This document shows positions 15,871 through 59,817 of a stretch of DNA of 64,000 nt, in pieces. Positions within the stretch are counted from its first letter, which is position 1; every line of letters begins with the position of its first letter. Source of the stretch: Octopus sinensis (lineage: Eukaryota); NCBI RefSeq assembly GCF_006345805.1, contig NC_043005.1, forward strand, positions 6,510,001 through 6,574,000, read 5' to 3'. Made by a program: the position numbers and the translations under genes. The notes beneath the pieces were generated by a model, which saw only the letters and a program-made list of their open reading frames with translations, did no database searches and had not been told where the DNA came from.

Positions 15871-15942
15871 AGAGTTGTTAAACTGGAAAGATTTCGGAAG
15901 GTTCCAGCGTCGATATTCGTTATATCATTTTCGTACAACATC
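15871..15942 (-). CDS. LRR exon 18 (T class): [23 protein letters not shown]
   Basis: cttatgtttcag / 72 nt / gtaagt. Last exon before the gap. Confidence 0.9.
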
Positions 15943-17428
15943 CTGAAACATAAGATTGAGTTAAGAATATTTATTGAACAAATTTGTGTCTAAAGAATTG
16001 GATGATGCAAGAGATGAAATGTAGATTACTATAAAGATGAACTTGATGATGATGTTGTAGATATCGTTGGGTTGGATGAGGGCAGTGATGAGTTTGATGA
16101 TGTGGAAGTGGAGAAGAAATTATTGTGGGAGTGTTGATGATGATGATATGATGCTGATCTTATCAATTTTGATCATCGTGAAAAAGATGAGGATTTGTAG
16201 TTTTGTTGTGATGATGAATATGGTATTGATGATGATGTTGACATTTAAAGGGGTTCCCAAAAAACCTACACTAATTATAGGAGTCGAACCATTCGACTAT
16301 CATAAAACACCGAGATTTACGTTTAACATTTCTCTCCCGTTGTAGCTACTAACATGGCCATATTAAGAGTAGGAAGTTTAAATTTTAGAGGCCTAGGATT
16401 GCCCTTGAAGCAGGGGTGTCTGCTCAACGACCTCGGCCCTTTAGAATTAGACAGAATTGCTCTCAGTGAGACCAGATTATTCATCATGTAAGAACTTGCC
16501 CCAAAACTCGACGACAATCAGATCTTTTCGTTTGTTACTTGACCGGGAATGGGAGGTGGGTTGATTGTTCAAGCAGCACATTTTCTGTACTTGTATACAT
16601 ATATTTATGTATACACCTGTCGATTGTTGCTGGTGTGTGCAAAATCATCGAGCATGAATGGTAATCAGCGTTGATCGAGGAGTAAACATAAGAAATAATA
16701 TAGAAAAGAATATACAGGCACAAATCGATACACTCGTGTACATTCACTCACCCTGAATGACACAGAGTCGCGTATGCACATACATACACAAAATCATATG
16801 CATTATAAGAAACTCAAACATAAACATAAACACTGATAGTCACACACACACTTACACTTGCACACACATACATTCACACAGATACATGCACACGCACTCA
16901 CATGTACACACACACCTTCCGAGATATTCACAAATAATAAATGTTCCTTTGGAAATCGACTGAGTGTATATAGTGCGTTAAGGAGAGTGAGAGAAAAATG
17001 AAAGCATGGAAAGACATTGAATGTTTAGAATTATATTGTCAATAAAAGAGAATCAAGAAACTAATTAAACTTACAGAGTCTTTAAACTGGGAAGATTTTG
17101 AAAAGATCCAACTTCAAGTTCAGTGATGTCATTATTAAACAACTCTCTGTAACAAAAAAAAATGAGCCGTAAAAACGTGTATACAGGTCCGAATGAAATG
17201 TTAAATTTATTGCCTAAATATTGAGGAACGTGACGCTGATGATGATGGTGTAATGATGATGGTGATGATGAAGAGGATAATGATGATGAAGGTGATGATG
17301 ATGATTTTCATGATGCTGATGATGATGACGATGATGATGATAATGATGATAATGATGATGATGATGTTGATGATGATGATGATAATGATGATGATGGTGT
17401 TGATGATGATGATGATGATGATGATGAT

Positions 17429-17493
<65 letters not shown>

Positions 17494-17506
17494 AATGATG
17501 ATGATG

Positions 17507-17561
<55 letters not shown>

Positions 17562-18829: not shown

Positions 18830-18883
<54 letters not shown>

Positions 18884-19267
18884 ATATATATATATATAAA
18901 TAACGGGAAGCTTTATGAAAATAACAAAAGACAAGACGGTGGAAAACAAACGAACAATTGTATTAGTATGGCGCTCAGGAAATATAAATAAACAAGTCTT
19001 TAACGTTTCGAGCCTACGCTCTTCAACAGAAAGATACACAGAGAGAGAAAAACACAGAAAGAAGGAGAGAAAAAAAATGCGTGCAGTAGCTAACGAATCA
19101 ACATGGCGATCTGATTTCGGCCAGAGGTCAAAGATCAAACATGAGACGCGAGAGCGAAATAAGGGGAGATAATAGGGTTGATAAATGGGTTGAGGGACCA
19201 GCTAAAAGTGCGTGGGAGGGGTCTGGATGTGTGTATGTATAGGGTTGGTGTATGTATTAGTATGTAT

Positions 19268-19302
<35 letters not shown>

Positions 19303-20967: not shown

Positions 20968-21054
<87 letters not shown>

Positions 21055-22581
21055 CATATGTATTCATATATATATATATATATACACTTACACATATATA
21101 TATATATGATATACATTTTATATATACAGAAATAGAATGAAAGAGGGCGAGAAACGAATAAAGTAGAAAGAAAAGAATGACCAGAGGTAAAGAAGGAGGA
21201 AAAGAAGAAGAAGAGGAAGAAGGAGAAAAAGAAGAGAAGAAGAAGAACAAGAACAACAACAACAACAACAACAACAAAAAACAAGAAGAAGAAGAAAAAT
21301 GTGTAGTATGAAGAGCAAGTATTGAAAATGAATGAGTCGACAAAATAAACGAAATACTTTAAGAAGCCGAACTTCAAGAAGCGGGAAGAAAAGAAGCGAA
21401 ACAAGAGTATACATGTCGATAATACTTATATTCACACACACACCCTCGCACGTACACATGTACAGAGACTCACAAACAGTCACACAGTTCTATCAAAAGG
21501 GATTGAGATAAGGACGGGACGCGAAAGAAAATGGGAAGGTTTTAAATATTTAGTAATATTTTGTAAAGGAAATATTATTAACAAGTTTTATGCAACTTAC
21601 ATCACTTCTAAGCTGGTCAGATTAACGAAGGATCCTACTTGAATCTTCTCGATATTATTTTCATCCAAATGTCTGTAACAGAAAATTTTGGAAACGAGAT
21701 TTATTGGAAAATATTACGTCTGAAATGTCTATAAAATAAAATATTAGATGATTCATATTTGTTAGGTAGTATGATTTCTTGTCTGTATTTGTTAGCTTCC
21801 TTAAATACTGAGAACAGTTTATTGTTTTGCTCGTGTTTTGCCGCTATTTGCATCGGTTTTCCTTGCTTCTGAAGTAGATATTTTTGTAGTCCTATGGTGG
21901 TTATTTTATAGTAGTTTTCCAGCTGTATAAGACCTCTACCACCCTCTATACGTTGTATATATAGCCTTTCTCTGTCAGATTTTGGGTGGTGCATCCTAGA
22001 TCCTGTCATTATTTTTCTTGTTTTCCTGTCTATTTTGGTTGATTCATTTAGTGTCCAGTTAAGGATATTGTAGCTGTAACTTATAACTTGGACGGCTAAA
22101 GTGTTAATACCTATTATCTTGATTTTAGCATTGAACTCTGTTTTTAGTATTGATCTAACTCGTCTATAGTATACTTGGTTTATTTTCTCTTTCATTTGTG
22201 TGTGTTGTATCATATCTAGTTCACGGATTCCTAAATATTTGTATGTCTGACTTTAGTCTAATTCTCTTATTTCATTGGTTTTATCTAGCGTGACGTTGCT
22301 ATTCTTAACTAATTTTCCTCTCTTCAGCGTTGCATTGGAGCATTTTTCTAATCCAAATTTCATATCTGCTTCTTTCGTAAATCCATGTACTGTCTATAGT
22401 AGTGTTTCCACCTGTTTGTCATTTATGGCGTATATTTTTAGGTGATCCATTTATAAAATGTGGCTGATTGTTTTGCCGTAATATTTGTATACGCATCCAG
22501 TTCTATTTAGCATGTCAGATAGAGGTGTCAGACCCAAGCAGGAAACGAGAGGAGAGAGCGTGTCTCCCTATCATTATTATA

Positions 22582-22631
<50 letters not shown>

Positions 22632-25600
22632 ATTGTCTTATTTTTTACACGTGCTTTCACATAGAGGGCAGCTCTATGTGCTTTGGGTAAGTGCTCATAG
22701 TTTTACTTCATTGAAGCTGTTCATCTCCCTCAGCTTTTGGTATCCTTATGGCTATCTCTTCAATAGGGGCTATTGTGTCCAGGTTTGGATTGCGCTAGAT
22801 GGTTGTCGTAAAGTTGAGACCTTAGTTTAGTACTGCTTGAGCTTTGAGTTTCACAAACTTCTTAATCTGGCGTGTGTCACCATTTGAAATTCTTTCCTAG
22901 ATATTGTTGGATTGTTTTTCTATCATCATCTCTGGTTATTTTCCTAAATAATAAAGATAACCTCTCTTTGATTTCATTAATTAGTTGAATGGTTTTCCAG
23001 CTGGTAATCGATCCTGTCAGGTGGTATTAGCTTTGAGTCTCTACATCTACACAGGAAAATTTGATGGTCTGAAAGACGAGCCAGTTTTTGATGCAGTTTC
23101 CCTATGTTTCCACTGAAGTCTATTATATCGGCTCCGTACCGATTAGATAATACAGTTCTATATTTAAAAGACGAGGAAATATGTACGTTATTTACATTAT
23201 TTACATTTGACGGATATTTGTTCTCATCTTGTTTTTTGGTAACACAACCTTACGGCTGATATCCCTTCCAGCCTTCATCAAGTGCCTTGGGGAAATTTCC
23301 AACCTGGGTTCTCATTCCTAAGGCCTTTTTCGATTTTTTAATAACATCGAAACATACCTTAGGAACATGGCAAAATTTTCAACACGAATAATGTAATTCG
23401 CAATAATTAATTAGAACGGAGGACCATGAAAGTTAATCAGCGTTGATCGAGAAGTAAACATAAAGAATAATATACAAAATAAATGATAAAGAAATCGAGT
23501 CGTTTACTCGAGTATGTTCATTCATAACGAACGTCACAGACTGACACATGCGTAATAAAGCACAAAATTATATGCATTAATTATCTGAAACTCATATCAT
23601 AGACACTGATATTCACACAATCGCACACACCCTCACACACACGCAGACACACAGCCACACACACATCTTCTCAGACATTCACAAAGAATCAATGTTCCTG
23701 TGGAAATTGACTGAGTGTATATAGTGCGTTAAGAAGAGTGAGAGAAGAAAGCATAGAAAGACATTAGATGTTTAGAATCATATTGTCAATAAAAGAGAGT
23801 AAAAAAATAATGCAACTTACAGAAACTCTAAACTGGGAAGATCTAGAAAAGATCCAACTTGAAATTCCTTGATATCATTTTTACGTAACATTCTGTAACA
23901 AAAATATACAATGCCTATATAATGCCTAAAAATTTAGGAAAGCTAAGCTGATGATGACGGGGTAGATGACAATGACGATGATGATGATGATGTTACAAAG
24001 TGCCCTTCAAAAGGAAAAGATCCCAAAGTGGATTTTTCGCCAGACTTGACAGCAAAGAAAAACACATTCGCTGTCTGCGCACGATTAGTCTCGGGAAGTT
24101 TGTGAGGAGCCCATTGAGGCAATTTGCTGATTTTCCGCTGGCACTCGGTTATCGATGAATGGTTGAATGAACAAATGTAAGATTATCTGGGAGTTCCTCA
24201 ACAGATACGATGGAATTTTGTTCTACCAGTTTTGCAGAACATTCTCGTCGATCTCTGAAGATCTTCCATGACGAGGCTAGTCCTACAGGCTGTAGTCTCA
24301 GATACGGAATTGCAGTGAAATGCAAACAAAAGATGCGAAGGAGGAAGAGGAGGAGAAGAGAAACAATGAGGAGAAGAATAAATATAAAAAGGGAAATTAA
24401 AAAAAGGGAAATAAAAAAGGGAATACAAAAGAAAGGAAAATGAGATACAATTACAAGCTGCAGAAAATAGATGTAGAGAAATATGTTGAAGCGGATGATG
24501 AAGTAGAAGTGGGAGAATAAGAAGGGGTACAAGAAGGAAAAGCAGGAGAAGGGATGGGGAAGAGAAAAAGGAAGAACAAGTAGAAATATAAGAATAAGAT
24601 GGAGAATAAATAGTAGGAGAAGAGGAAGTACTAGAACTACAGGCCAAAAAAAAATAAAGAAGCAGAAAAAGTTGTAGAAGGAGATGAAGGTGACAAACTA
24701 TAAATTGTGTCTATAGAAAGACATTACAGGTTAAGAAAGATATTGTCAAAGAAATACTATAAAAGGAGGTTGATTCAACTTACAGAGTTGTTAAACTGGA
24801 AAGATTTCTGAAGGTTCCTGCTTTGATATTCGTTATATTATTTTGCTGCAATTGCCTGGAACATAACATTGAGTTAAGAATATTTATTGAACAAATTTGT
24901 GTCTAAAGAATTGGATGATGAAAGAGATGAAATGTAGATTACTATAAAGATGAACTTGATGATGATGTTGTAGATATCGTTGGGTGGGATGAGGGCAGTG
25001 ATGAGTTTGATGATGTGGAAGTGGAGAAGAAATTATTGTGGGAGTGTTGATGATGATGATATGATGCTGATCTTATTAATTTCGATATTCGTGAAAAAGA
25101 TGAGGATTTGTAGATTTTGAAGTGATGATGAATATGGTATTGATGATGATTTGGACATTTAAAGGGGTTCCCAAAAAGACCTACAATAATTATAGGAGTC
25201 GAACCATTCGACTATCATAAAACACCGAGATTTACGTTTAACTTTTCTCTCCCGTTGTAGCTACTAACATGGCCATATTAAGATTAGGAAGTTTAAATTT
25301 TAGAGGCCTAGGATGGCCCTTGACACAGGGGTGTCTGCTCAACGACATCGGCCATTTAGAATTAGACAGAATTGCTGTCAGTGAGACCAGATTATTCATC
25401 ATGTAAGAACTTGCCCCAATACTCGACGACAATCAGATCTTTTCGTTTGTTACTTGACCGGGAATGGGAGGTGGGTTGATTGTTCAAGCAGCACATTTTA
25501 TGTACGTGTATACACATATTTATGTATACACGCACCGATTGTTGCTGGGGTGTCCAAAATCATCGAACACCAGATCAGCTAGTCAACAATGTCTCAGAGA

Positions 25601-26059
25601 TACCGACAAGATCTCTGTAATAGGCCAGTGTGGAACTGTACCAGCCCATGCGTTCTTTTAGAAAGTATATTAAAAGGAGTTAAACTGAGAAAATAGGCAG
25701 TAATAGTGTAGCTTATCCAAATTTAAAAACTGTCGCCTACCCAGATCATGAGTTTGCAATATACACGACTGAGTGTATATAATGCGTTAAGGAGAGTGAG
25801 AGGAAAAAGAAAGCATGGAAAGACATTGAATGTTTAGAATTATATTATCAATGAAAGAGAATCAAAAAACTAATTAAACTTACAGAGTCTTCAAACTGGG
25901 AAGATTTTGAAAAGATCCAACTTCTAATTCCTTGATATCATTTTGATACAACTCTCTGTAATAAAAAAGTGAACCGTAAAAAAAGGTACACAGATCCGAA
26001 TGAAATAAAAAATATATTGCCTAAATATTGAGGAAAGGGACGCAGATGATAATGGTGTA

Positions 26060-26114: not shown

Positions 26115-29100
26115 GTCATGATCAGGATGATGAACGTGATGATGATGATGGTGGTGGTGGTATTTACGATAATAATGTTGATGAGGAAATTAATAAGGTA
26201 AGAATGACCATAGATGTTATTAAAATTGCTAGGAAATCGTTAATTGGATATAATAATAAATTTTAGTAACACCTTCAGTAGGTGAAGACGTCCTTTAGTC
26301 TGGTCTGTCGGTGTTTCTATTTTTCCTAACCATTGTCATCAGCGCTTGACATACTTCTGGAGAATTCATTTCACGTCACCAGGAAATATTTGGTCGAAAA
26401 TGGATCTTTCGTCAGACTTGACAGCAAAGAAAAACACATTCGCTGTCTACGCACGAATAGTCTCGGGAAGTTTGTGAGGAGCCCATTGAGGCAATTTGCT
26501 GACTTTTCCGCTAGCACTCGGTTATCGAGATTCTCTGGTAGTTCCTCAACAGATACGTTGGAATTTTGTTCTACCAGTGTTGCATACCATCCTCGTCGAT
26601 CTCTACAGATCTTCCATGATGAGGCTAGTCCTATAGGCTGTTGTCTCAGACACGGAATTGCAGCAAAATGCGGAGGAAAGATACAACGGAGGAAGTGGAG
26701 GTGAAGAGAAACAAGTAGAAGAAGAGAAACAATGAGGAGAAGAATAAATAAAAAGGGAACTAAAAAATAGAAATAAAAGACAGGGGATAAAAAAAGACGG
26801 GAAATTGAGATACAACTACAGGCTGCAAAAAATAGATGTAGAACAATATGTAGGAGAGGATGCTGAAGTAGAAGTGGGAGAATAAGAAGGGGAAGAAGAA
26901 AGAGGAGGAGGAGGGGAGATGGGGAAGAGAAAAGGAAGAACAAGTAGGAACATTGGAATGAGATAGAGAATAAATAGAAGGCAAAGTTGAAATACTAGAA
27001 CTACAGGCCAAAAAAAAGAAGAAGTAGAAACCGTTTAAGAAGGAGATGAAGGTGGCAAACTATAATTTGTGTCTATAGAAAGACATTACAGGTTAAGAAA
27101 GATATTGTTAAAGAAATACTATAAAAGGAGGTTGATTCAACTTACAGAGTTGCTAAACTGGAAAGATTTCTGAAGGTTCCTGCTTTGATATTCGTTATAT
27201 TATTTTGGTACAACGTCCTGAAACATAAGATTGAGTTAAGAATATTTATTGAACAAATTTGTGTCTAAAGAATTGGATGATGAAAGAGATGAAATGTAGA
27301 TTACTATAAAGATGAACTTGATGATGATGTTGTAGATATAGCTGGATGGGATGAGGGCAATGATGAGTTTGATGATGTGGAAGTGGAGAAGAAATTATTG
27401 TGGGAGTGTTGATGATGATGATATGATGTTGATCTTATCAATTTTGATATTCGTGAAAAAGATGAGGATTTGTAGTTTTGTTGTGATGATGAATATGGTA
27501 TTGATGATAATGTTGACATTTAAAGGGATTGCCAAAAAGACCTACACTAATTATAGGGGTCGACCCATTCGACTATCACAAAACACCGAGATTTACGTTT
27601 AACATTTCTCTCCTGTTGTAGCCGCTCTCATTGCCATATTGAGAGTAGGAAGTTTAAATTTTAGAGGCCTAGGATTGCCTTGGAAGCAGGGGTGTCTGCT
27701 CAACGACAACGGCCCTTTAGAATTAGACAGAATTGCTGTCAGTGAGACTTGATTATTCATCATGTGAGAACTTACTCCAATACTCGTCGACAATCAGATC
27801 ATTTCGTTTGTTTCTTGACCCGGAATGGGAGGTGGGTTGATTGTTCAAGCAGCACATTTTATGTACGTGTATACACATATTAATGTATACACCCGACGAT
27901 TGTTGCTGGTGTGTCCAAAATCATCGAGCACCAGTTCAGCTAGTTACCAATCTCTCAGAGATATCGAACAGATTTCTGTAATACGCTAGTGTGGAACTGT
28001 ACCAACCCCTTGTGTTCTTTTAGAAAGTATATTAAAAGGAGTTAAACTGAGAAAATAGGCAGTAATAGTGTAGCTTATCCAAATTTAAAAACTGTCGCCT
28101 ACTCAGATCATGAGTTTGCAATTTGTACGATTGACTTAGATAAGCCCTGTATGTTATGACCCGGATGCTGGAGCTGAACATGTTGATAGCAGCACGTGAA
28201 AAAGTACTTATAGAAGAGTAGAAGGGTGGAGGAGCTTGTCCTGTTGTAAGTCGAGGCGATTTGGTAACCTACGATAATGGCTTTAGAAATGTTTCAATGC
28301 GAAACATGAAGGTTGCATTATCACAGCTAAGTTGCGTGCTATGAGAAACGAGAGAACCTTATATGTTCGATGGGCCCGGGTGATGGAGGCGCAGCGTGGT
28401 AAGAAAATATTAATTGCGTCTTTGACGAACAAAGGCGTACATAAGCTAAGCAATTCCTGGCAGACCTGTGATGCCTTTCACCAGCACTTTCTTCGGTGGT
28501 TCGGTGGGAGTAGCAGGTCAGAGACGTTAGTGGTTTTCAGTCCGTACCTCGAAGGCTTTACTCAACTTTCCACGGCACACGTTGACCGCAGCGAAAGGTA
28601 GAAAACTTCATTCGCAATTAATGACGCTCTTGTCCGCTGCACGAGGCGCAATGGCGCAAATTACCCTGTTTGGACAGTCTGCCCTACTAGCTTTACGTAA
28701 ACATGCTAGGCCTGATCTCCAATCAACTCGAAGTCTTCTGTTGTTACTGAAAACAGAACGGGCGTATTTCCAGTTCTGTGAACCGGAACATAGTGACGCT
28801 GATAGAGAAAACAAGAGGGACACAGTAGATAACTACCAGCCCATAACACTGCGCCAAACTGAATTTAACACTTTGGTCAATGAGTTACGGAACTATGTGA
28901 CACTTCTCGAATATTTGGATGGTGAGGCGCAAACTTGTGCAATCCCGACCCGCTCCATTCACAACTTCCACGTCATTCTATACACTATAGAATGTGTAGA
29001 GTGGAAACTTGGCTTCAAGGGGACCATGGTAAGTTAAGATCATTCGAAAGCATTCGATACAGTCGACCATTGGTACTTGGAGGCAGTCATCAATGGAGTT

Positions 29101-29845
29101 GGCTTCGGCTGCTCTAAAGAATTTAGATCTCTGTAATAATGAACTACATCTGCTCGACAGACAAAAATAATGGTGACATCTATCAGCCGTTTCAGACTTC
29201 CTTGCCGATCCATCGAAGGTGCCCTTTCTCATCGCTTCTATATGCATTGTGTGTCGAGCCTTTAATGGGGAAGTTAGGGTTAGGGTTAGGGGGCATTTTG
29301 TTTGAACGGGGTTCGGAAGTGATGTGTAAATAAATCAAGCCAATACACTCGTGTACATTCACTCACCCTGAATGACACCCTGAGTGGCATGTGCACAATC
29401 ATGCACAAAATCATATGCATTATCAGAAACTCAAACATAAACACAGACACTGATAGTCACACACACACACTCACACATACACACATGCACACACACAATC
29501 ACACACACACCGGCTCAGATATTCACAAAGAATAAATGTTCCTGCGAGAAACGACTGAGTGTATATAATGCGTTAAAGAGAGTGAGTGAAAAAAGAAAGC
29601 ATGTAAAGACATTAGGTGTTTATAATTTTATTGTCAATAAAAGAGAATCAAAAAACTAATTAAACTTACAGAGTCTTCAAACTGGGAAGACTTTGAAAAG
29701 ATCCAACTTCTAATTCCTTGATATCATTTTGATACAACTCTCTGTAATAAAAAAGTGAACCGTAAAAAAAGGTACACAGATCCGAATGAAATAAAAAATA
29801 TATTGCCTAAATATTGAGGAAAGGGACGCAGATGACAATGGTGTA

Positions 29846-29903: not shown

Positions 29904-31246
29904 GTCATGATCAGGATGAGGAAGGTGATGATGATGATGGTGGTGGTGGTGGTATTTACGATAATAATGTTGATGAGGAAATGAATAAGGTAAGAATGAC
30001 CATAGATGTTAGTTAGTTAGTTAGTTAGTTAATTTGGCTCAAAAGCAAATAGCAAGGCCATGTAGGGGGACATGGAGTTAAGTACAGGTTGGTGTTCATG
30101 TAAAGAGTTCAGGCCACTTGAGGTCCAGGGAGGCTTTGAACAAAGCGGTCGTTGGCATCTTCACCATCTCATCTGGCAGCTTGTTCCACGGATCCGCAAC
30201 CCGGACGGAGAAAGCACCTCTACTTCGATTGAGATGAAATCGTCGCAGGTAGAGCTTTTCGGAATGACCCCGCAGCCGACGCTCCGGAGCAGGAGTGAAG
30301 AACAGCTCTTTCGAGAGTTTACACTTCCCGCTTATGATGTTGTGGGCGAGAATGAGATCACCACGGCGGCGGCGTTTTTCAAGAGAATAAGGTCGAGCGT
30401 CCTCAGCCTTCTTCGTAGGACAATTTTTGAGACCATGAACCAGGCGGGTAGCCAGCCTCTGGACTCTTTCGAGGTGCTGTTTGTCTTTGAGGAGATAAGG
30501 AGAAGAGGCTTGAATCCCATACTCCAATATGGGTCTCACCAGCGTGACATAGAGTGGCAGGAATATGGCTGCTGTGAGCACAAGTCGATACACTCGTGTA
30601 CATTCACTCACCCTGAATGACACAGAGTCGCGTATGCACATACATACACAAAATCATATGCATTATAAGAAACTCAAATATAAACATAAACACTGATAGT
30701 CACACACACACTTACACTTGCACACACATATATTCACACAGATACATGCACACGCACTCACATGTACACACACACCTTCCGAGATATTCACAAATAATAA
30801 ATGTTCCTTTGGAAATCGACTGAGTGTATATAGTGCGTTAAGGAGAGTGAGAGAAACCAGAAAGCATGGAAAGACATTGAATGTTTAGAATTATATTGTC
30901 AATAAAAGAGAATCAAGAAACTAATTAAACTTACAGAGTCTTTAAACTGGGAAGATTTTGAAAAGATCCAACTTCAAGTTCAGTGATGTCATTATTAAAC
31001 AACTCTCTGTAACAAAAAGAAAATGAGCCATAAAAACGTGTATACAGGTCCGAATGAAATATTAAATTTATTGCCTAAATATTGAGGAACGTGACGCTGA
31101 TGATGATGGTGTAATGATGATGGTGATGATGAGGAGGATAATGATGATGAAGGTGATGATGATGATTTTCATGATGCTGATGATGATGACGATGATGATG
31201 ATAATGATGATAATGATGATGATGATGGTGTTAATGATGATGGTGT

Positions 31247-32035: not shown

Positions 32036-35000
32036 ATATATATATATATAGGTGAGAAAGTTTGTGTGTGAAAGCACGTGGTTGAATATATAGAAAATAT
32101 TAAAAAATGAAAAAACTACAGAAGGCTTGTTTTAAAAGGTTAAAAAATATATATTTGAGTCATTATGTCAGAAGAATGTTATAAATTTTTTTCATACAGT
32201 GACGTAGTTTTTGAAGAAATTACCGGTTTCGTGTTTAACTTTACAAATTCTCAAAACATTGTTATAATTTCGTTCGTTAAGAAGTGTAAAAGAGAGTTCC
32301 AGGTAAGGGGAGGTAATAAGTGATTTCTTCCGGTGTGAGGGAGATTATCGCTTAATATTTCTTGCCTTTATTTTTAATGGGGTGAGTTTCTCTGTATAAG
32401 AATGTTAGAGTGGTTAAGTTTGGGCTTATATTTTTCAATAAAGAATGTTTCCTTGTTTAGTCTAATTTGTATAGGAACACCAACACAAATTAGAAAGAAA
32501 AGAATGACCACAATAGAGAAGAAGAAGAAAAGAAGAAGAAGAAGAAGAAGAAGAAGAAGAACAACAACAACAACAACAACAACAAAAAACAAGAAGAAGA
32601 AGAAAAAGGTGTAGTATGAAGAGCAAGTATTGAAAATGAAAGAGTCGACAAAATAAACGGAATACTTTAAGAAACCGAACATCAAGAAGCGGGAGGAAAA
32701 GAAGCGAAACAAGGGTATACATGTCGATAATACTTATATTCACACACACACCCTCGCACGTACACATGTACAGAGACTCACAAACAGTCACACAGTTCTA
32801 TCAAAAGGGATTGAGATAAGGACGGGACGCGAAAGAAAATGGGAAGGTTTTAAATATTTAGTAATATTTTCTCAATGAAATATTATTAACAAGTTTTATG
32901 TAACTTACATCAATTCTAAGCTGGTCAGATTAACGAAGGATCCTTCTTGAATCTTCTCGATATTATTTTCATCCAAATATCTGTAACAGAAAATTTTGGA
33001 AACGTGATTTATTGGAAAATATTACGTCTGAAATGTCTATAAAATAAAATAGTAGATGATTAAAAAATGTATAGAAGTGTTTTATGATAAAATGTAAAGT
33101 AGCATGGCTAAACAACAACTTGTACTTTTCCCAATTCTCGACGACAATCAGATCTTTGCGTCTGTTACTCGGCCGGGAATGGGAGTTGAGTGCCTGTTAT
33201 GTGCACGAATATTTGGATCCCGAGATAAAATTGTTCTTCCGGGACCCAGATTGTAAGCTGTTGACCCTGGACGTGAGTAATAGCGAATGTAGTGTAATTA
33301 GACTGGGGGTCGTCTTTGTGCAAACCGGAGCCAAACAGCCGGATTTCTTAAGTTTGGAAACCCTTATATATATATATTTATATATATATATTTATATATA
33401 GCTAGCTAGAGCTTTACTGTTTGTGGGAGATTGGAACGACATCTGAGACGCATGTTGTGATTGTGTTGAATACATACATTGGGGAAAATAATTTTAAGAC
33501 CGATGATAAAAGTTCTATTTCTGACAAAATATTTTGTTACTAACACCATACAAATTATGTATATCTTTTACACCTTATAATACAATTCTCATTGGATAAT
33601 TCTTTACAAATGTTAATGGCCGTCAGCATTCGGTTGCATTACGAAAGTTGATTCGGCGGTCCAACTGCGCCTTTTTTTTCTTGGGACGCCAGCCGTTTGC
33701 CGATCTTTATATTGACCAGTCTCCGAGTATATCTTCCAGGCTTGCACGTAAGCCGTTTTACTGCACTTTAGTTGCTTGCTGATGTTCGAAAAGGAAACTT
33801 TCTGCTGGTGGAGTAATACGATCTTTCCTCTCGTAACTGAACTGAGGCTACGTTGTTTACCCATCATTAATCAATTGTATGATAACATTAAATTATAACA
33901 CTTCATAGTGCAGTTAGGCTAGTTATTTGACCACCCATTTTGGTAAAAAAATAAATTGTCTACATATTACATGGTCTTTAACTAATTTTGTCGGTAAATT
34001 TGAAACGTTTATATTAATTAAGCATTAGAATTCTTTAGGTTGTATAAAAATAGTTATTGTCTGTGTCATTCGAAATAGAAATAAATTCTGCATAAGGTGT
34101 AAGAGATAAAAATAATTTGTATGGTGTTAGTAACACCATACAAAACAGAAATTTTATAATCGGTCTTAACTTTATTTTCGCCAGTGTATATATATGCCGG
34201 GCTTGTTCTCCGATAGAACTGGCGTATTCCCAGTTCTATGGACCGGGGCGTAGTGACGATGATAGGGAAAAACGAAAAGAAGAGTGACACATTGGATAAC
34301 CTTAGGCCTATAAGATACTGTTCTATATTTACGAGATGAGGAATAATGAATTTTGGAGTGAATTTTAAGGGCTTATAAATCTAATATTTTTCTAATCTAT
34401 CCATATGCTACTCATATCTGCACTCGGTCTGCTTAGGATGTTGTTGCGTCCTAGCTGCTTCTTTTAGTTTTCGTATATTCCAGTGGTGTTCTATGTCTAT
34501 TATTTTAACTTCATCCTACAGGGAGGCGTGATGGTCTCCATTTTTCCATATATGATCAGCTATACCCGATTTATCAATATCTCCCCGTGTCGCAGCTTTG
34601 CGAAGTTCGTCTACCATTATTTTTATGGGGTGGCATTTTTCTCCTTGTATAACCTACCACAGCTGCATGGGAGGGAGTACATGCTGTCTTTGGTCATATT
34701 CTCTTCTATTGGTGGTTTTAGACTAAGGGGATATTTGCGAAGTGTTGTATTACTCTTGAATACTGCCCTGATATGATATCAGCCGCATATCTTTTCTATC
34801 TTTTAGGAGAGGCCTTTCAAATAGGGTAGACAGACTGTGCTTGGATTCATTGGGGGTTATCCTTGATCATTTCTGAGAAGTGAAAGGAATTCTTCACGCA
34901 CGATGTTGACTTTCCTGCTAATGGACTGATTATAAGGGAGCGGTTCAGTGGATGACATGCTGAACCTGTAGGGAGAATGTGCATGTGTGTTAGTTTACTG

Positions 35001-46365: not shown

Positions 46366-49300
46366 CACACACATATGTATTCATATATATACACTTGCAT
46401 ATATATATTATAAATAGAAAGAAAGAGGGCGAGAAACGCATAAAGTAGAAAGTGAAGAATGACCACAGTAGAGAAGAAGAAGAAGAAGAAGAAGAAGAAG
46501 AAGAAGAAGAAGAAGAAGAAGAAGAAGAAGAAGAAGAAGAAGAAGAAGAAGAAGAAGAAGAAGAAGAAGAAGAAGAAGAAGAAGAAGAAGAAGAAGAAGA
46601 AGAAGAAGAAGAAGAAGAAGAAGAAGAAGAAGAAGAAGAAGAAGAAGAAGAAGAAGAGGAAAGTGGAGGGGGAGAAAAAGAAAAATGTGTAGTATGAAGA
46701 GCAAGTATTGAAAATGAACGAGTCGACAAAAGAGACAAAATACCTTAAGAAGCCGAACATCAAGAAGCGGGAAGAAAAGAAGCCGAACAAGGGTAGACAT
46801 GTCGATAATACTTACAGTTGCAGGCCAAAATGTTCTGAACGGCATTTTTTTCGTCAGAAAAGTAGGTATACGTTTTTATCAAAGTTGTTTTGTATTCTAT
46901 AATTTTCACAGACAATAAATACGATATTATTTGTTATTGTCTGAGATTTTGGTGTAATTTGAGAGGATAATACAAAAGTTATGAATGATTTAGTGATTTA
47001 CTGCAAAACCCATGGCGGTCAAAATGATCAGAACGGTTGCTTTTACTCCGTGTTTTAGTATATATAACCGTCGATCTCTAATGTTTTGAATTTGTTTACG
47101 TGATGGTTCGTTTACTAAACATTAGTAAGAATATTTGCAGTGTACTTTGTTAATATAATGCCACTTACTCCGTTACCAATTCGTCAGCAGATTATTAAGC
47201 TTCGAAGGAAGGATAATTTAAGTATTGGATCTATTGCAAAGATTGTTAACAAGTCAAAAAGTGTTGTTCACGGTATTCTTAAGGTCTAGAATGATTGTGG
47301 TTCGTGTAAAGCAAGAAAGTCTACAGGTAGACCAAGAAAAACGACCAAGAGAGAAGATCGTGCTATGGTAAAGTTGGTTAAAAATGACAGATTTAAAACT
47401 GCTGCTGCTGTGTTTCAGGAAATGAGCATTGTACTGAAGAAAACTTTATCTCGAAAAACTGTGTCTCGACCTTTAGTTGAACATGACCTACAAGCAAGAG
47501 CACCTGCAGTGAAGCCACTGATCAGCTCCAAGAATAAAAAGTGTCGTCTTACCTTTGCAACCGAACATGTGTTGTGGTCCCAAGGAAAATGGTAAACGGT
47601 GCATTTCAGGGATGAATCTAAGTTTATATTATTAGGCTCAGATGGGAAAAGGTACATTCGTCGAAAAGTAGGTGAAAAATTGTCGCCTAAATGCCTTAAG
47701 ACTAGCGTTAAATTCGGTGGAGGAAGTGTCATGGTTTGGTGGATGATGTCTGGAGATGGTGTGGGCCCTTTGGTGCGATTACATGGAAAGGTAAATGCAG
47801 AAGTTTATAAACAACTTGTAAAAGATCATGTCTTGACTGTGCTGAGAAATTCAACTAAGCGACCATCCATATTCATGCAGGAAAATGCCCCATGTCACAT
47901 GGCTAAGGTGATCATGAACTTCCTCAAGGCCGAAAAGGTTATTGTTATGGATTGGCCTGCTCAAAGCCCAGATCTCAATCCTATTGAAAATGTGTAGAAT
48001 ATTCTAGGAGAACGTTCGAAAGCCAGAAATCCTAAAACAACGGAACAATTATGGAATGCTCTTCAGGAAGAATGGAATAAGATCACCCAGCAAGAAATTG
48101 AAAATTTAATTTCCTCATGCAGTCGAAGATGTCAAAGTGTGATTGAAGCTAAAGGGCTTCACACTAAATATTAAATAATTCCAGTATTCTGTCGTTTTTG
48201 ATTATTTTGTTATTTTTTCAACCGTTCTGATCATTTTGACCGCCATGGGTTTTGCAATAAATCACTAAATCATCCATAACTTTTGTATTATCCTCTCAAA
48301 TTACACCAAAATCTCAGACAATTACAATAACAACTCATATCGTATTTATTGTCTGTGAAAATTATAGAATATAAAACAGCTTTGATAAAAATTTATACCT
48401 ACGTATGTGACAAAAACAATGCCGTTCTGAAAATTTTGGCCGCAACTGTATATTCACACACACACTTGCACGTATACATCTACAGAGAATCACAAACAGT
48501 TCTATCAGAAGGGATTGAGATAAGGATGGGACGCGAAAGAAAATGTGAAGGTTTTAAATATTTAGTAATATTTTGTCAATGAAATATTATCAACACGATT
48601 TATGCAACTTACATCAATTCTAAGCTGGTCAGATTAACGAAGGATCCTTCTTGAATCTTCTCGATATTATTTTCAAGCAAATTTCTGTAACAGAAAATTT
48701 TGGAAACGAGATTTATTGTAAAATATTATGACTGAAATGTCTTTAAAATGAAATATTAGATGATTAGAAAATGTATAGAAGTGTTTTATGATAAAATGTA
48801 AAATAGCATGGCTAAACAATAACTTGTACTTTTCCCAATTCTCGACGACAATCAGATCTTTGCGTCTGTTACTCGGCCGGGAATGGGAGGTGAGTGGCAG
48901 TTATATACAGGAATGACCAGGATCCCGAGGTAAAATTAATCTTGCGGGACCCAGATTGTGAGCCTTTGACCCTGGACGTGAGTAATAGCGAAGGTAGTGT
49001 AAAGAGACTGGTGGTCGTCGTTGCGCATACCGGAGCAAAACAGCCGGATTTCTTGAGTTTCGAAGCCTTTATATCACGTGATCAGGTGACCGACCAGACC
49101 ATCAGATGTTGTTACACATCGCTGGTCACAATGTGTTCGCATTGTTTTAGCCTTCGAATGACGCCAGCCCGCTGGCTAAGCGAGCAGGCCAACAGAAGAA
49201 AGAATGGGAGAAAGAGTACAGCAGGGATCATCACCCCTTGCCGGAGCATCGTGGAGCTTTTAGGTGTTTTCGCTCAATAAACACTCACAACGCCCGGCCT

Positions 49301-52300
49301 GGTACTCGAAACCAAGATCCTACGACCGCGAGTCCGCTACACTAGCCACTGGGCCATTGCGCCTCCTCGTGATCACATGATATATCATGTGTGACCCTTC
49401 TGCCCGGCACTACTCGCCATAATCGATCGTTAGCCACTACACATATTCTTTTCTCTCCTTGTTTCTCGCCTTGTTTTTTCTGTGCTCCTTTCTGTAGAAG
49501 AGCGTAGGCTCGAAACGTAAAAGACCTTTGCTATTCCTGAGAGTTATACTAATACATCTGTTTGTTTTGTACACCACCTGTCTTCGTCTTTTATTTTTCG
49601 TAAACTCTCCCTATATATTTATATTTAGGTAGGGCTTTACTGTTTGTGGGGGGATTGGAACGTCATCTGAGACGTTGGTTGCGATTGTGCTGAATACATA
49701 CACTGGCGAAAATAAATTTAAGACCGATGATAAAAGTTCTATTTCTTTCAAAATATTTTGTTACTAACACCATACAAATTATTTTTATCTTTTACACTTT
49801 ATGCAGAATTTATTTCTCTTTCGAATGATACAAACATTAACTAAGGTATTTTTTGATGTTATAATAACATCGAAAAATACCTTAGGAATGTAGCAAAATT
49901 TCAACATGAATAATGTAATTCACAATATGTAATTAGAACGGAGAGACATGAAAGTTAATCAGCGTTGATCGAGAAGTAAGCATAAAAAACAATATACAAA
50001 TCAAATCGTTTACTCGAGTATGTTCATTCATAACGAAAGTAACAAACTGACACATGCGCAATAATGCACAAAATTATGTGCATCAGAAACTCATACATAA
50101 ACAGAGACGCAGATATTCACACACTCACGCACACACACACATACCTCAGATTTTCACAAAGAATTGTATATTTCTGTTGAAAGCGACTGAGTGTATATAG
50201 TGCATATATGGAAAGAAATTAAATGCTTAGAATTATAATGTCAATAAATGACATGTTACTTACAGATTCTCTAAACTGGGAAGATTCTGAAACGATCCCG
50301 CTTCTAATTCCTTGATATCATTTTTATGCAACTCTCTGTAACAAAAAAAAATACATAAAGCCTAAAAATTAAGGAAAGCGAAGCTGATGATGACGGGGTA
50401 GATGACAATGATGATGATGATGATGATGTCGAATGAGCAATTGATGAGTATCATGATGATATTGATGATGATGGTAGTGGTATTGATGGTGTTTATCTTA
50501 GTTATGTTGATGAGGAAAGCCATGGCAATGATAACGTTGATGATCGTGATGGTGAAGAATTTACGTAGCTGGAAATATTTTCAGAGAAATAAAGAAAGTA
50601 AATGGCTAAGAGTTTAAAGGTTGTAGATATTTGCATATGATTAAATTTGCTTTAAGAATACGATTAGAAGATCGATATGTGGCATTCATCGTTGATCCAG
50701 AGCTAAACGCAGTAAGAGTTATACAGACATGAATACACTAGTATTGGACCAGCCATACACAAAACATAAACATATGTATATACATACATAAAATGTGCTG
50801 CTTGAACTGTCACACGGTCCTATGTACTTACACACACACGTAAGGACTCACAAACACACACTGACAGCCATTCAAATACAATCATATACACGCTCTGTTG
50901 AGAGAGTGCGAATGCAGAGAGGGGAAAGAGCGCCATTTAATTGGATGGCAATTAAATATTATAAATATGACTCTAATGAAATACTATGACGAATTATCTG
51001 AATTAGAACAAAGTAAAACCAGAAAATTTCTGGACAATTCCAGCTTCAATTTTCTTGATAGTATCGCTATACAAAGTCCCGAAAAACAAAAATTTAGGTT
51101 GAACAGTATATGTATCGTGTCACCCCATACAAAATGCATTTTTATACTTCTTTTATTTTCATAATTAAGATAAATAAATTTATTTTTTAATCTAAAAATA
51201 TACTCTCCGTCATTTTCTACAATGCATTTACCTCTTGCAGAACATCCTCATCGATCTCTACAGATCTTCCATGACAAGGCTAGTCCTCTAGGCTGTAGTC
51301 TCAGACACGGTATTGCAGTGAAATGCAGAGGAAGGATGCAACGAAAGAAGAGGAGGAGAAGAGAAACAAGTATAAGAAGAAAAACAATGAGGAGAAGAAT
51401 AAATAAAAAGGTCCCTCTTCCAAACTTCACTTGTCCGTACAGAAAAATACTCCTCACTACTATTCTGAAATCGCCTACAAAATACTTATTTTTTTCCAGA
51501 TGTGAAAATGTCCGGCAAATATGGAGTGTGGGGCATTGTCTCCCGTCCAGACTGGTCACGCGTTTGGAATGTCATCCTCTCGTATGTTGCCGAGCGTTAT
51601 CCTGATCGAAGGACAACATTCGTCTTGATAAGAAAAATGGTCGTTTTTCGTTCACAGCTGACTGACGGCGTTCAAGCGGCTGGCAGTAGATATCCTTTGT
51701 TATCTTTTGTTCAAAGTGGACCAGACAATTCATATACCACCAAACAAATAGTAACACCTTTTATGGGGGAAGACTTCCTTTAGTCTGGTCTGTCGGTGTT
51801 TCTACTTTTCTTGACTATTGTTTTCTGCACTAGACATACTTCTAGAGAATCCATTTCTCGTCAGCAGTAATTATTTGGTCCAAATTAGCGTTAGGGTTGC
51901 CAGTATATATTTGGTCGAAAATGGATCTTTCGTCAGACTTGACAGCAAAGAAGAACGATTAGTCTCGGGAAGTTTGTGAGGAGCCCATTGAGGCAATTTG
52001 CTGACATTTCCGCTGGCACTCAGATGTCGATGAATGGTTGAATGAATAAATGCAAGATTATCTGGGAGTTCCTCAACAGATACGATGGAATTTTGTTCTA
52101 CAAGTTTTGCAGAACATCCTCGTCGGTGTCTACAGATCTTCCATGATGAGGCTAGTCCTCTAGGATGTAATCTCAAACTACATATTGCAGTGAAATGCAG
52201 ACAAAAATACGAAGGAGGAAGAGGAGGAGAAGAGAAACAAGTACAAGAAGAAAAACAATGAGGAGAAGAATAAATATAAAAAGGGAATTTAAAAAAGGGG

Positions 52301-53131
52301 AAATAAAAAAGGGAATACAAAAGAAAGGAAAATGAGATACAACTACAAGCTGCAGAAAATAGATGTAGAGAAATATGTAGGAGAGGATGCTGAAGTAGAA
52401 GTGGGAGAATAAGAAGGGGAAGAAGAAGGGGAGGAGGAGAAGAGATGGGGAAGAGAAAAAGGAAGACCAAGTATGAAAATAAGAATAAGATGGAGAATAA
52501 ATAGCAGGAGAAGAGGAAGTACTAGAACTGCAGGCCAAAAAAAAATAAAGAAGCAGAAAAAGTTGTAGAAGGAGATGAAGGTGACAAACTATAAATTGTG
52601 TCTATAGAAAGACATTACAGATTTAGAAAGATATTGGGAAAGAAATACTATAAAAGGAGGTTGATTCAACTTACAGAGTTGCTAAACTGGAAAGATTTCG
52701 GAAGGTTCCTGCTTTGATATTCGTTATATTATTTTGGTACAACTTCCTGAAACATAAGATTGAGTTAAGAATATTTATTGAACAAATTTGTGTCTAAAGA
52801 ATTGGATGATGAAAGAGATGAAATGTAGATTACTATAAAGATGAACTTGATGATGATGTTGTAGATATCGTTGGGTTGGATGAGGGCAGTGATGAGTTTG
52901 ATGATGTGGAAGTGGAGAAGAAATTATTGTGGGAGTGTTGATGATGATGATATGATGCTGATCTTATCAATTTTGATCTTCGTGAAAAAGATGAGGATTT
53001 GTAGTTTTTGTTCTGACGATGAATATGGTATTGATGATAATGTTGGTGTTGGTGTTTTCTGCTGGTGACGAAGTTTTTGGTGTTGATGATGGTTGTCATG
53101 TTCCCTTTTGTCCCATCCATCCCCCAAAAGC

Positions 53132-53204
<73 letters not shown>

Positions 53205-53818: not shown

Positions 53819-53894
<76 letters not shown>

Positions 53895-53919
53895 TGTTGT
53901 TGTTGTTGTTGTTGTTGTT

Positions 53920-53959
<40 letters not shown>

Positions 53960-54769
53960 CAGTCGAAGTCGCTATTGTTGTGGTAGAAGAAGGAGGAGGA
54001 TGTGGTGGTGGATGAGGAGGGGGAGAATGAGAAGTAAAAAGAAATTTTCGATATAAAAGAAGAAATTTAGGCAGATGCATGTTTCGTGTTTAGGAGTAAA
54101 TGATAAAGAAATAGAAAAGTTGAAATAAAATTACGCTGAATGGAAATAATTAGAACGGAGAGCCATGAATAGTAATCAGCGTTGATCGAGAAATAAATAT
54201 AATAAATAATATACAAAAAGATATAAAAGTCAAGTCGCTCACTCGTGTACTTTCACTCATACAGACAGACACATACACATAGACACACATGTACAAAGAT
54301 CCTATACATTCATTATCAGAGACTCATACATAAATAGTGTATATAGTGTATATAGTGTATATAGTGCGTTAGGAAGAGTGAGAGAAAAAAGAAAGCATTG
54401 AGAGACATTAAATGATTAGAATTATATTGTCAATAAAAGAGAATCGAAAAACTAATGCAACTTACAGAGTCTCTAAATTGGGAAGATCTTGAAAAGATCC
54501 AGCTTCTAATTCAGTGATTTGATTTTCATACAAATTTCTGTAACACAAAAAGTGAGACGTGAAAAAATGTACACAGGTCCGAATGAAATATAAAATATAT
54601 TGCCTAAAAATTTAGGAAAATAGATGATGATGATGATGATGATGATGACGACGATGATGATGATGATGATGATGACGACGATGATGATGATGATGATGAT
54701 GATGACGATGATGGTGTAGATGATGATGATAATGATGATGCCGGTGGTGGTCGTATCGATGATGGTGAA

Positions 54770-54800
<31 letters not shown>

Positions 54801-55301: not shown

Positions 55302-55333
<32 letters not shown>

Positions 55334-59817: not shown

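What the first reader, a model, noticed from the sequence alone, without database searches (positions are those of the whole stretch)
15871..59817. Hidden array of 18 intact single-LRR 72-nt exons spread over 44 kb of apparent junk
Seen: 18 minus-strand segments of exactly 72 nt, all with YAG acceptors and GTAAGT donors and no stops. Each encodes one 24-aa typical LRR; they are too short for the ORF track. They fall into T (GTF..LSSL), S (GSF..LPSL) and C (GSFVNLTSL) classes, with a fourth degenerate B class. Established: one LRR per 72-nt phase-2 exon is the architecture of LGR/RXFP-type receptors and other extracellular LRR genes. Inference: this is a recently and rapidly expanded LRR ectodomain in a probable octopus genome, a candidate variable recognition (immune or chemosensory) receptor. 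Exons and splice sites stay intact while the surrounding introns have decayed into TE debris, which argues for function.
Basis: partly seen in the sequence, partly recalled or inferred. Interest (0 to 1): 0.92.

Follow-up and report, generated by a model that had tools for sequence, protein, structure and literature searches.

The report
Giant octopus LRR receptor exon array
The window holds 18 of at least 39 one-repeat exons of a very large, apparently unannotated octopus gene for a leucine-rich-repeat surface receptor, which grew by repeated exon duplication; selection has kept its splice sites and scaffold residues intact, but its 3' end and its expression remain unknown.

Summary
Eighteen minus-strand segments of CAG|72 nt|GTAAGT, all open in one frame, each encode one 24-aa typical LRR. 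Shuffles give about 0.05 such segments.

The array is much larger than reported. The flanks show 39 intact exons from C9:6,525,871 to 6,653,753. A signal-peptide/LRRNT first exon matches at C9:6,663,186-6,663,380, so the gene spans at least 137 kb.

The closest proteins (47-53% identity) are Octopus LRR adhesion-GPCR family members. Their architecture is SP-LRRNT-LRRs-LRRCT-Cys-rich-SEA-like-HRM-like-GPS-7TM. An O. bimaculoides paralogue has the same exon structure.

Proper tests do show selection:
- Splice columns: 1 change against 45 expected.
- Nonsense changes: 0 against 18 expected.
- Indels in exons: none.
- LRR scaffold codons: omega about 0.2.
- Predicted ligand-face codons evolve at or above the intron rate.

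Several things remain unresolved. No LRRCT or 7TM lies in the 96 kb downstream. A 100-N assembly gap cuts the array 450 bp after the last exon. No annotated protein matches the array, and I had no transcript data.

Verdict: a new, extreme member of a known kind, of moderate interest.

The parts
59746..59817 (-). LRR exon X22, class T ([23 protein letters not shown])
   Evidence: CAG|72 nt|GTAAGT, open frame
57989..58060 (-). Dead B-class exon copy: acceptor lost (GCA), in-frame TAG, donor GTAATT
   Evidence: Profile score 20.6; sequence shown
56088..56159 (-). Dead B-class exon copy: frame open but donor GT changed to GG
54466..54537 (-). LRR exon X23, class S
52675..52746 (-). LRR exon X24, class T; first exon of block copy 1 of [T S' C S]
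50264..50335 (-). LRR exon X25, class S'
48613..48684 (-). LRR exon X26, class C
41737..41808 (-). LRR exon X27, class S
38818..38889 (-). LRR exon X28, class T; first exon of block copy 2
37338..37407 (-). Third dead B-class remnant (approximate coordinates): AG and GT lost, 6-nt deletion
   Evidence: Local alignment to the 56088 copy
36603..36674 (-). LRR exon X29, class S'
32909..32980 (-). LRR exon X30, class C
30935..31006 (-). LRR exon X31, class S; identical in sequence to X38
29670..29741 (-). LRR exon X32, class S
27146..27217 (-). LRR exon X33, class T
25884..25955 (-). LRR exon X34, class S
24784..24855 (-). LRR exon X35, class T; first exon of block copy 3
23821..23892 (-). LRR exon X36, class S'
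21601..21672 (-). LRR exon X37, class C
17075..17146 (-). LRR exon X38, class S
15871..15942 (-). LRR exon X39, class T; last exon found
   Evidence: No further family exon in the 96 kb downstream
15319..15418 (.). Assembly gap of 100 N, 450 bp 3' of X39. T-unit similarity runs right up to it; beyond it only dispersed repeats match the array
61701..63986 (+). Non-LTR retrotransposon ORFs (RVT_1, zf-RVT) inside the intron between X21 and X22
47596..47997 (+). DDE_3 transposase fragment inside the 6.8-kb intron between X26 and X27

Best explanation
The window contains exons 22-39 of a single very large minus-strand gene on chromosome-scale contig C9 of an octopus genome, most likely Octopus sinensis.

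Gene structure. It starts with a signal-peptide + LRRNT exon at C9:6,663,186-6,663,380. At least 39 exons of exactly 72 nt follow, each encoding one 24-aa typical LRR and separated by phase-2 introns of 0.7-9.6 kb that carry transposon insertions and microsatellites.

Family (shown by similarity). It belongs to the octopus-expanded family of LRR-bearing adhesion GPCRs. Their architecture is SP-LRRNT-LRRn-LRRCT-Cys-rich module-SEA-like-HRM-like-GAIN/GPS-7TM.

Growth (shown from the repeat structure). The array grew by tandem duplication of exon+intron units and of a multi-exon block [T (B) S' C S], presumably through unequal crossing-over.

Selection (shown). During this growth, selection kept every splice site, the reading frame and the LRR scaffold residues. 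The codons of the xxLxLxxNx face evolved at or above the neutral rate.

Function (inferred). The exons are spliced into one long LRR solenoid that forms the ligand-binding ectodomain of a cell-surface receptor with a rapidly changing binding face.

Unresolved. Whether this copy is still joined to the LRRCT-to-7TM part is unknown, because the assembly breaks 450 bp after exon 39.
For: Anatomy:
- 39 intact exons and 0 plus-strand hits in 224 kb.
- The first exon matches P0121 residues 1-63 at 60% identity, E = 7e-16.

Family:
- The best protein relatives are Octopus family members: P0121 53%, P0075 51%, P0184 48%, P0105 47%.
- P0184 carries LRRNT, LRRs, GPS and 7tm_2.
- The P0105 gene in O. bimaculoides has the same 72-nt single-LRR exons.
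- G000 holds at least 80 family first-exon matches (88 rows in all, a few of them unrelated LRR genes) and more than 100 Cys-rich-module matches, co-located with 7tm_2 hits.

Selection:
- Splice columns CAG+GTAAGT show 1 change on the tree against 44.9 expected (P about 1e-18).
- Nonsense changes: 0 against 18 expected (P about 1.5e-8). There are no exon indels.
- Scaffold codons have omega about 0.22; the other codons about 1.0.
- Concave-face codon positions 1+2 show 8.2-8.5 changes per site against 5.2 in introns (P about 1e-4).
- In the young T clade, exon nt 1-36 have 0.44 changes per site against 0.15 in flanks (P = 7e-5). Pooled over young clades, nt 37-72 have 0.08 against 0.22 (P = 1e-8).
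- The three dead B copies show what decay looks like here.
Against: - No LRRCT, Cys-rich, HRM, GPS or 7TM exon lies in the 96 kb downstream, or anywhere on C9 near 6.4-6.5 Mb.
- No protein above 55% identity to the array exists in a 5.8-billion-protein database at lengths 237-3276 aa, although other O. sinensis RefSeq proteins are present. The locus therefore seems unannotated.
- I had no transcript evidence.
- Whole-exon omega is about 0.8. Outside the scaffold positions the exons change about as fast as introns, which also fits relaxed constraint.
- Selection tests on a tree describe the past, not the present.
- I did not read the first exon itself; I saw only a search row.
- The parsimony counts and the intron-based tree are approximations. 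Gene conversion could produce part of the excess change in T-class exons.
Confidence: 0.62

Rival explanations
1. The locus is a recently orphaned gene fragment or young pseudogene. It is a 5' part (first exon + LRR exons) that lost its LRRCT-to-7TM part by rearrangement, and its exons look intact only because too little time has passed.
For: - No 3' domains within 96 kb, and none on the related unplaced scaffolds among the scored hits.
- No annotated protein.
- Omega is about 1 at most positions.
- Some copies are identical or nearly so (X31 = X38, X11 = X13).
- A related array on scaffolds C9192/C11063 contains an exon with a lost acceptor.
Against: - Unit similarity runs straight into a 100-N gap and stops there, which points to an assembly break rather than a biological end.
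- Along the tree of 39 copies, about 45 splice-site changes and about 18 nonsense changes are missing. The array was therefore under selection through nearly all of its expansion, including the youngest duplications.
- The three B copies show that decay is visible on this time scale.
Confidence: 0.2
2. The array is a functional LRR-only gene, or a cassette array used combinatorially. Any subset of the interchangeable phase-2 exons could be spliced to give ectodomains of variable length and composition.
For: - All 39 exons are symmetric (72 nt, phase 2 on both sides).
- Every possible exon-exon junction codon reads Leu, Ile or Met, the hydrophobic LRR position.
- Brown-alga ROCO genes with 72-bp phase-2 LRR exons show such alternative splicing (PMC11378527).
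Against: - No transcript data.
- The uniformly strong CAG/GTAAGT sites suggest constitutive rather than regulated splicing.
- The full-length family model P0184 uses about 21 LRRs in series.
Confidence: 0.12
3. The modules are copies of a mobile element, or a satellite, that happens to carry an LRR-like open frame.
For: The copies are embedded in repeat-rich DNA, and the units are 1-2 kb repeats.
Against: - All 41 copies are on one strand at one locus.
- Close copies elsewhere occur only in similar arrays on three unplaced scaffolds and in family genes.
- Exon length, phase and splice sites are conserved far beyond the neutral rate.
- Scaffold residues are under purifying selection.
- No transposon hallmarks flank the units.
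Confidence: 0.01

Closest known systems
Octopus-specific LRR-bearing adhesion GPCRs (e.g. O. sinensis LOC115224769 = P0184; probably the 'group 3' expansion of Ritschard et al. 2019, PMC6408891)
   Same: - Closest sequence relatives (47-53% identity).
- Same SP+LRRNT first exon and the same 24-aa typical LRRs.
- Same one-LRR-per-72-nt exon structure in the O. bimaculoides paralogue.
- Family clustered and expanded in octopus.
   Different: - At least 39 LRR exons here, against about 21 LRRs in P0184 and about 13 in the P0105 model.
- No LRRCT, Cys-rich, HRM, GPS or 7TM part found for this copy.
- No annotated protein.
- Equivalence with Ritschard's group 3 is inferred from domain content, not tested.
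Glycoprotein-hormone / LGR-type receptors (LH receptor gene structure, Koo et al. 1991 as cited in PMC11378527)
   Same: The LRR ectodomain is built from similar-sized single-LRR exons, all separated by phase-2 introns. It is explained by exon duplication from one prototype.
   Different: - Those are class A (7tm_1) receptors with about 9-17 LRRs and old, conserved exons.
- Here the relatives carry GPS + 7tm_2.
- LRR-7tm_1 proteins are more distant, at 33-35% identity.
Brown-alga LRR-ROCO genes (Ectocarpus, Saccharina)
   Same: - Tandem 72-bp phase-2 exons, one LRR each.
- Exon duplication and shuffling.
- Positive selection reported on the concave face (PMC11378527).
   Different: - Those are cytoplasmic LRR-ROC-COR GTPases of algae, unrelated in the rest of the protein.
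- Alternative splicing is documented there and not here.
Tetrahymena 90-bp-exon LRR genes
   Same: - Long tandem arrays of exons of one exact length with an extreme phase-2 bias.
- Growth by unequal crossing-over.
- Retrotransposons in the introns (PMC6564038).
   Different: 90-bp exons, introns of about 250 bp, thousands of genes, a ciliate.
Lamprey/hagfish VLR loci (own knowledge, not tested against sequences)
   Same: Many diverse single-LRR coding modules at one locus, with variation concentrated on the concave face.
   Different: VLR cassettes lack splice sites and are copied somatically into an incomplete germline gene. Here every module has canonical splice sites and one orientation, i.e. 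ordinary exons.
Long-array extracellular LRR proteins (chaoptin, artichoke, Slit)
   Same: These are the top non-octopus database hits. They have comparable numbers of typical LRRs.
   Different: Only 26-34% identity, which is generic LRR similarity. Their termini differ.

Membership tests
Octopus LRR adhesion-GPCR family (P0184 type) | N-terminal signal peptide + LRRNT exon | tested here: met
   G000:C9:6663186-6663380 (-) matches P0121 residues 1-63 at 60% identity, E = 6.7e-16. It has the same 66-aa open frame as other family first exons and lies 9.4 kb upstream of exon X01. I did not read the sequence itself.
Octopus LRR adhesion-GPCR family (P0184 type) | Series of typical 24-aa LRRs, one per 72-nt phase-2 exon | tested here: met
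   39 such exons here. The same structure is seen in the O. bimaculoides P0105 gene.
Octopus LRR adhesion-GPCR family (P0184 type) | Closest sequence relatives are family members | tested here: met
   P0121 53%, P0075 51%, P0184 48%, P0105 47% identity. All non-octopus hits are at or below about 41%.
Octopus LRR adhesion-GPCR family (P0184 type) | LRRCT + Cys-rich + SEA-like + HRM-like modules after the LRRs | tested here: inconclusive
   None in the 96 kb 3' of X39 by tblastn, and none near this locus in whole-genome searches. However, a 100-N gap cuts the array, and only about 115 candidates were scored per search.
Octopus LRR adhesion-GPCR family (P0184 type) | GAIN/GPS + 7tm_2 | tested here: inconclusive
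   The PF00002 search found family-type hits at C9:7.45 and 13.59 Mb and on other contigs, but none at C9:6.4-6.5 Mb. The same caveats apply.
LGR/RXFP-type class A LRR receptors | 7tm_1 domain joined to the LRR ectodomain, and closest relatives being LGRs | tested here: not met
   LRR+7tm_1 proteins (P0009, P0070) are only 33-35% identical. The nearest full-length relative has GPS + 7tm_2. Only the exon structure is shared.
VLR-like somatically assembled LRR cassettes | Cassettes without splice sites flanking an incomplete germline gene | tested here: not met
   All 39 modules have CAG acceptors and GTAAGT/GTATGT donors under strong selection, and all share one orientation.
Transcribed, spliced protein-coding gene | Spliced transcripts joining the exons | not testable with these tools
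   No RNA-seq resource was available. No matching protein in the database.

The most novel reading that the evidence does not exclude
The array is a diversification device. Because all 39+ exons are interchangeable (72 nt, phase 2, and every possible junction codon reads Leu/Ile/Met), cells could include different subsets. That would give an adhesion GPCR with a cell-specific LRR binding surface, an octopus counterpart to Dscam or clustered-protocadherin diversity, in a family reported to be expressed in suckers, skin and the axial nerve cord.
Probability: 0.1. Interest if true: 0.85.

Novelty: new member of a known kind. Interest (0 to 1): 0.5.

Why it matters
Octopus-specific adhesion-GPCR expansions have been linked to suckers, skin and the axial nerve cord. 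They were counted from annotated 7TM domains, about 21 genes across two species (PMC6408891).

This locus shows that the LRR-bearing branch is far larger in O. sinensis, with at least 80 family first-exon matches in the genome. It also shows that the branch contains giant, unannotated genes whose ectodomains are still growing by exon duplication. Their scaffold residues are conserved while the predicted binding face changes fast.

If the gene is expressed, it is a concrete candidate for rapidly evolving surface recognition in octopus sensory or neural tissue. It is also a clear animal example of the exon-array mode of LRR evolution known from brown algae and ciliates.

There is a practical lesson for annotation too. 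Arrays of 72-nt exons in repeat-rich introns are missed or truncated by gene predictors. The O. bimaculoides model P0105 begins with translated intron.

Tried and rejected
1. Mobile-element origin. Rejected: one strand, one locus, selected splice sites.

2. LGR/RXFP membership. Rejected on relatives and 7TM class.

3. VLR-like cassettes. Rejected because the modules are ordinary exons.

4. Search for the 3' end:
- tblastn of the P0105 C-terminal half against 224 kb.
- Whole-genome searches with two family C-terminal queries and with PF00002.
- Nothing at this locus or on scaffolds C9192, C11063 or C10429.

5. Search for an annotated or assembled protein. Three database searches covered lengths 237-3276 aa. 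One used a doubled query purely to widen the length filter. Nothing was above 55% identity.

6. Exact look-up of P0121's gene: not on record.

- My first pairwise version (exon 4.4% versus intron 9.8% divergence) chose pairs by exon identity and is biased.
- Tree-based counts show nearly equal overall rates.
- I therefore replaced it with site-specific tests.

10. Haplotig explanation for C9192. Rejected for the sampled piece: at most 96% identity over 442 nt, otherwise 70-78%.

11. Rfam and tRNA scans of the window: nothing.

Full report
**Observation**

On the minus strand of the window, the pattern YAG + 72 nt + GTAAGT occurs 18 times. Every instance is open in frame offset 1. A looser GTAAG donor adds a 19th hit at 14031-14102, which has a stop in frame offset 1 and is not LRR-like. 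The strict pattern occurs once on the plus strand, and 0.045 times on average in shuffles.

Each exon is 1 nt + 23 codons + 2 nt, so all introns are phase 2. Joined in order, they give 431 aa of uninterrupted 24-aa repeats with the consensus xLxxNxIxxIxxGxFxxLxxLxxL. This scores LRR_8 at E = 1e-158.

The classes T (6 exons), S including an S' subtype (9) and C (3) are real. A tree built only from flanking intron sequence recovers them. The degenerate B class is also real and consists of three dead copies:
- 56088-56159, where the donor GT is now GG.
- 57989-58060, with no acceptor and an in-frame TAG.
- About 37338-37407, with no AG, no GT and a 6-nt deletion.

**Extent**

The window is G000:C9:6,510,001-6,574,000. 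G000 is 2,719,151,902 bp in 13,516 contigs.

With 80 kb of flank on each side, a peptide-profile scan that ignores splice sites found 41 LRR-like 23-mers. All are on the minus strand and none on the plus strand. Of these, 39 are intact exons: CAG acceptor, and GTAAGT donor in 37 or GTATGT in 2. They run from C9:6,525,871 (X39, window 15871) to C9:6,653,753 (X01), which is the edge of the DNA I could fetch.

A whole-genome search with the N-terminus of the O. sinensis relative P0121 placed a signal-peptide + LRRNT exon at C9:6,663,186-6,663,380. It is on the minus strand, 60% identical, E = 7e-16, and lies 9.4 kb upstream of X01. The gene therefore spans at least 137.5 kb, and the window holds exons X22-X39. 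Introns are 0.7-9.6 kb long. They contain non-LTR reverse-transcriptase ORFs, a DDE transposase fragment and long microsatellites.

**The 3' end is missing**

No further family exon lies in the 96 kb downstream of X39. A 100-N gap sits 450 bp after X39. Similarity to other T units runs right up to the gap edge. Beyond the gap, only dispersed repeats match the array. So the array is cut by an assembly break.

Exon+flank copies 84-95% identical lie in similar minus-oriented arrays on three unplaced scaffolds:
- C9192, spanning 12-115 kb.
- C11063, which duplicates part of C9192.
- C10429, which has its own first exon.

The sampled piece of C9192 is not an allelic copy of the window. It contains one exon with a lost acceptor. 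These scaffolds may be the continuation of the gene or may be paralogues.

**What it belongs to**

The best database relatives are all Octopus proteins:

| Protein | Source name | Length | Identity |
|---|---|---|---|
| P0121 | LRRC15-like, O. sinensis | 461 aa | 53% |
| P0075 | metaclust (no species given) | 801 aa | 51% |
| P0184 | LOC115224769, O. sinensis | 1566 aa | 48% |
| P0105 | "toll-like receptor 5", O. bimaculoides | 784 aa | 47% |

Non-octopus hits such as chaoptin, artichoke and Slit-like proteins are 26-41% identical.

P0184 shows the full architecture. Pfam supports LRRNT, about 21 LRRs, GPS and 7tm_2. By eye, the sequence between the LRRs and GPS reads as LRRCT, a Cys-rich Ly6/uPAR-like module, a SEA-like domain and an HRM-like module, but Pfam gives no hit there. 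The family is therefore an adhesion GPCR with an LRR ectodomain.

The P0105 gene in O. bimaculoides (locus L059) has the same 72-nt single-LRR exons with similar intron flanks. Its annotated N-terminus is translated intron.

In G000 the family is large. There are at least 80 family first-exon matches, more than 100 Cys-rich-module matches and co-located 7tm_2 hits on C27, C29, C8, C2, C10, C25 and C9. A paralogue on C8 shows LRR exons at 71.27-71.37 Mb followed by LRRCT-to-HRM exons at 71.38-71.45 Mb on the same strand.

Ritschard et al. 2019 described an octopus-specific adhesion-GPCR expansion. Some members carry LRRs, and the genes are expressed in the axial nerve cord, suckers and skin (PMC6408891). 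Equating that group with this family is an inference from domain content.

**Organism**

The G000 size matches the 2.72 Gb O. sinensis assembly cited in PMC12564688. O. sinensis RefSeq proteins map exon by exon at 87-97% identity, including overhang into introns.

**How the array grew**

Exons lie inside duplicated blocks of 1-2 kb that are 81-96% identical. In the window, the class order is:

T S | T S' C S | T S' C S | S T S | T S' C S | T

So a block [T (B) S' C S] is present three times. Dead B remnants sit at the corresponding place in two block copies. B therefore died before the block duplicated, while the other exons stayed intact through the duplications. This is the pattern expected from unequal crossing-over.

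**Is it under selection?**

On a tree of the 39 units, exons show 4.4 changes per site and the neighbouring intron 4.8-5.1. Site-specific tests are decisive.

Against the flank rate of 5.0 changes per site:
- The nine splice-site columns (CAG, GTAAGT) show 1 change where 44.9 are expected (P about 1e-18).
- Nonsense changes number 0 where 18 are expected (P about 1.5e-8).
- No exon has an indel, while the flanks carry about 0.04 gap openings per nt.

By codon class:
- Scaffold codons (L2, N5, I7, I10, G13, F15, L18, L21) have omega about 0.22, with 25 synonymous and 20 nonsynonymous changes.
- All other codons have omega about 1.0.
- The codons of the xxLxLxxNx face (positions 1, 3, 4, 6, 22, 23) change at 8.2-8.5 per site at codon positions 1+2, against 5.2 in introns (resampling P about 1e-4).

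In young clades, where the flanks align unambiguously:
- T exons have 0.44 changes per site in nt 1-36, against 0.15 in flanks (P = 7e-5).
- Pooled over clades, nt 1-36 change at the flank rate (0.21 versus 0.22).
- Pooled over clades, nt 37-72 change at a third of the flank rate (0.08; P = 1e-8).

I read this as firm evidence for purifying selection on splicing, reading frame and fold. The evidence for diversifying selection on the binding face is suggestive only. Patchy gene conversion and tree error are the alternatives.

**Mechanism**

Shown:
- Gene anatomy.
- Family resemblance.
- Duplication history.
- Selection on splicing, frame and scaffold residues.

Inferred:
- The exons are spliced in series into an LRR solenoid of at least 936 aa. 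It forms the ectodomain of a surface receptor, most likely an adhesion GPCR, whose concave face evolves fast.

Open:
- Whether this copy still has its receptor part.
- Whether it is expressed.
- Whether exon choice varies. Any exon-exon junction would encode Leu, Ile or Met, so exon skipping would be structurally tolerated. The uniformly strong splice sites argue for constitutive use.

**Comparison and novelty**

The exon architecture is known from several systems:
- Gonadotropin receptors.
- Brown-alga ROCO genes, which have the same 72 bp and phase 2 (PMC11378527).
- Tetrahymena, with 90-bp exons (PMC6564038).

The protein family is a known octopus expansion. What is new is this member: it is apparently unannotated, it has about twice the LRR count of the annotated relatives, and it is still expanding. 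The size of the family in this genome is also new.

Interest is moderate. The finding is solid and gives testable leads, but it is a member of known kinds. Its expression and its 3' end are unknown.

Noticed in passing
window 1477-3125: A 78-bp minisatellite of about 21 copies at 87% identity. It carries long open frames of an acidic Glu/Lys-rich repeat (e.g. 1680-2402 +). It lies outside the LRR array, downstream of the assembly gap.
   Followed up: no
window 17237-17700, 31098-31592, 41899-42768: A (TGA)n microsatellite of 155-288 copies sits about 90 nt upstream, in transcript sense, of the S-class exons X38, X31 and X27. It is part of the duplicated unit, varies in length between copies, and creates long spurious His/Ser/Asp/Ile-run ORFs.
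   Followed up: partly
window 61701-63986 (+) and 60582-61615: An apparently long-ORF non-LTR retrotransposon (RVT_1, zf-RVT; ORFs of 657 and 438 aa) lies in the intron between X21 and X22. It is preceded by a (TAA)n tract of 345 copies. It looks young.
   Followed up: partly
introns, +22 to +46 after each donor and -25 to -11 before each acceptor (e.g. window 15825-15849 below X39): A moderately conserved intron motif (about TATAGTATTTCATTGACAATAT) follows most donors, and a CTTAACTCAAT...polypyrimidine stretch precedes acceptors. Several columns show 0-2 changes against a mean of 5. The same motifs flank LRR exons of O. bimaculoides paralogues in L059. They may be splicing elements or remnants of a short ancestral intron.
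   Followed up: partly
L059 (O. bimaculoides CM046629.1:10,400,675-10,483,064), gene at 10001-72390: The annotated protein P0105 ('toll-like receptor 5') starts with about 30 residues that are translated intron upstream of an LRR exon. It has no TIR domain. The model is a truncated family member with a misleading name.
   Followed up: partly
G000:C10:79.83-80.58 Mb: A dense cluster of at least 35 apparently intronless 7tm_2 ORFs of about 650-700 aa appeared in the PF00002 search. It is probably a separate class-B GPCR expansion (Methuselah-like?).
   Followed up: no
G000 scaffolds C9192 (about 12-115 kb), C11063, C10429: These unplaced scaffolds carry sister arrays of the same T/S exon units (84-95% identical with their flanks). 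C10429 has its own SP+LRRNT exon at 22916-23104. C11063 duplicates part of C9192. One sampled exon has lost its acceptor.
   Followed up: partly
C9:6,577,163-6,578,050 (13-14 kb beyond the window's right edge): A further B-unit-like remnant, 75% identical to the C9192 sample, lies in the intron between X20 and X21. I did not check it for an exon remnant.
   Followed up: no
window 16001-32000 and 52001-56000: There is a strong positive GC skew on the plus strand (0.2-0.4) across much of the array. It is probably driven by the (TGA)n tracts and the repeated units rather than by transcription.
   Followed up: no
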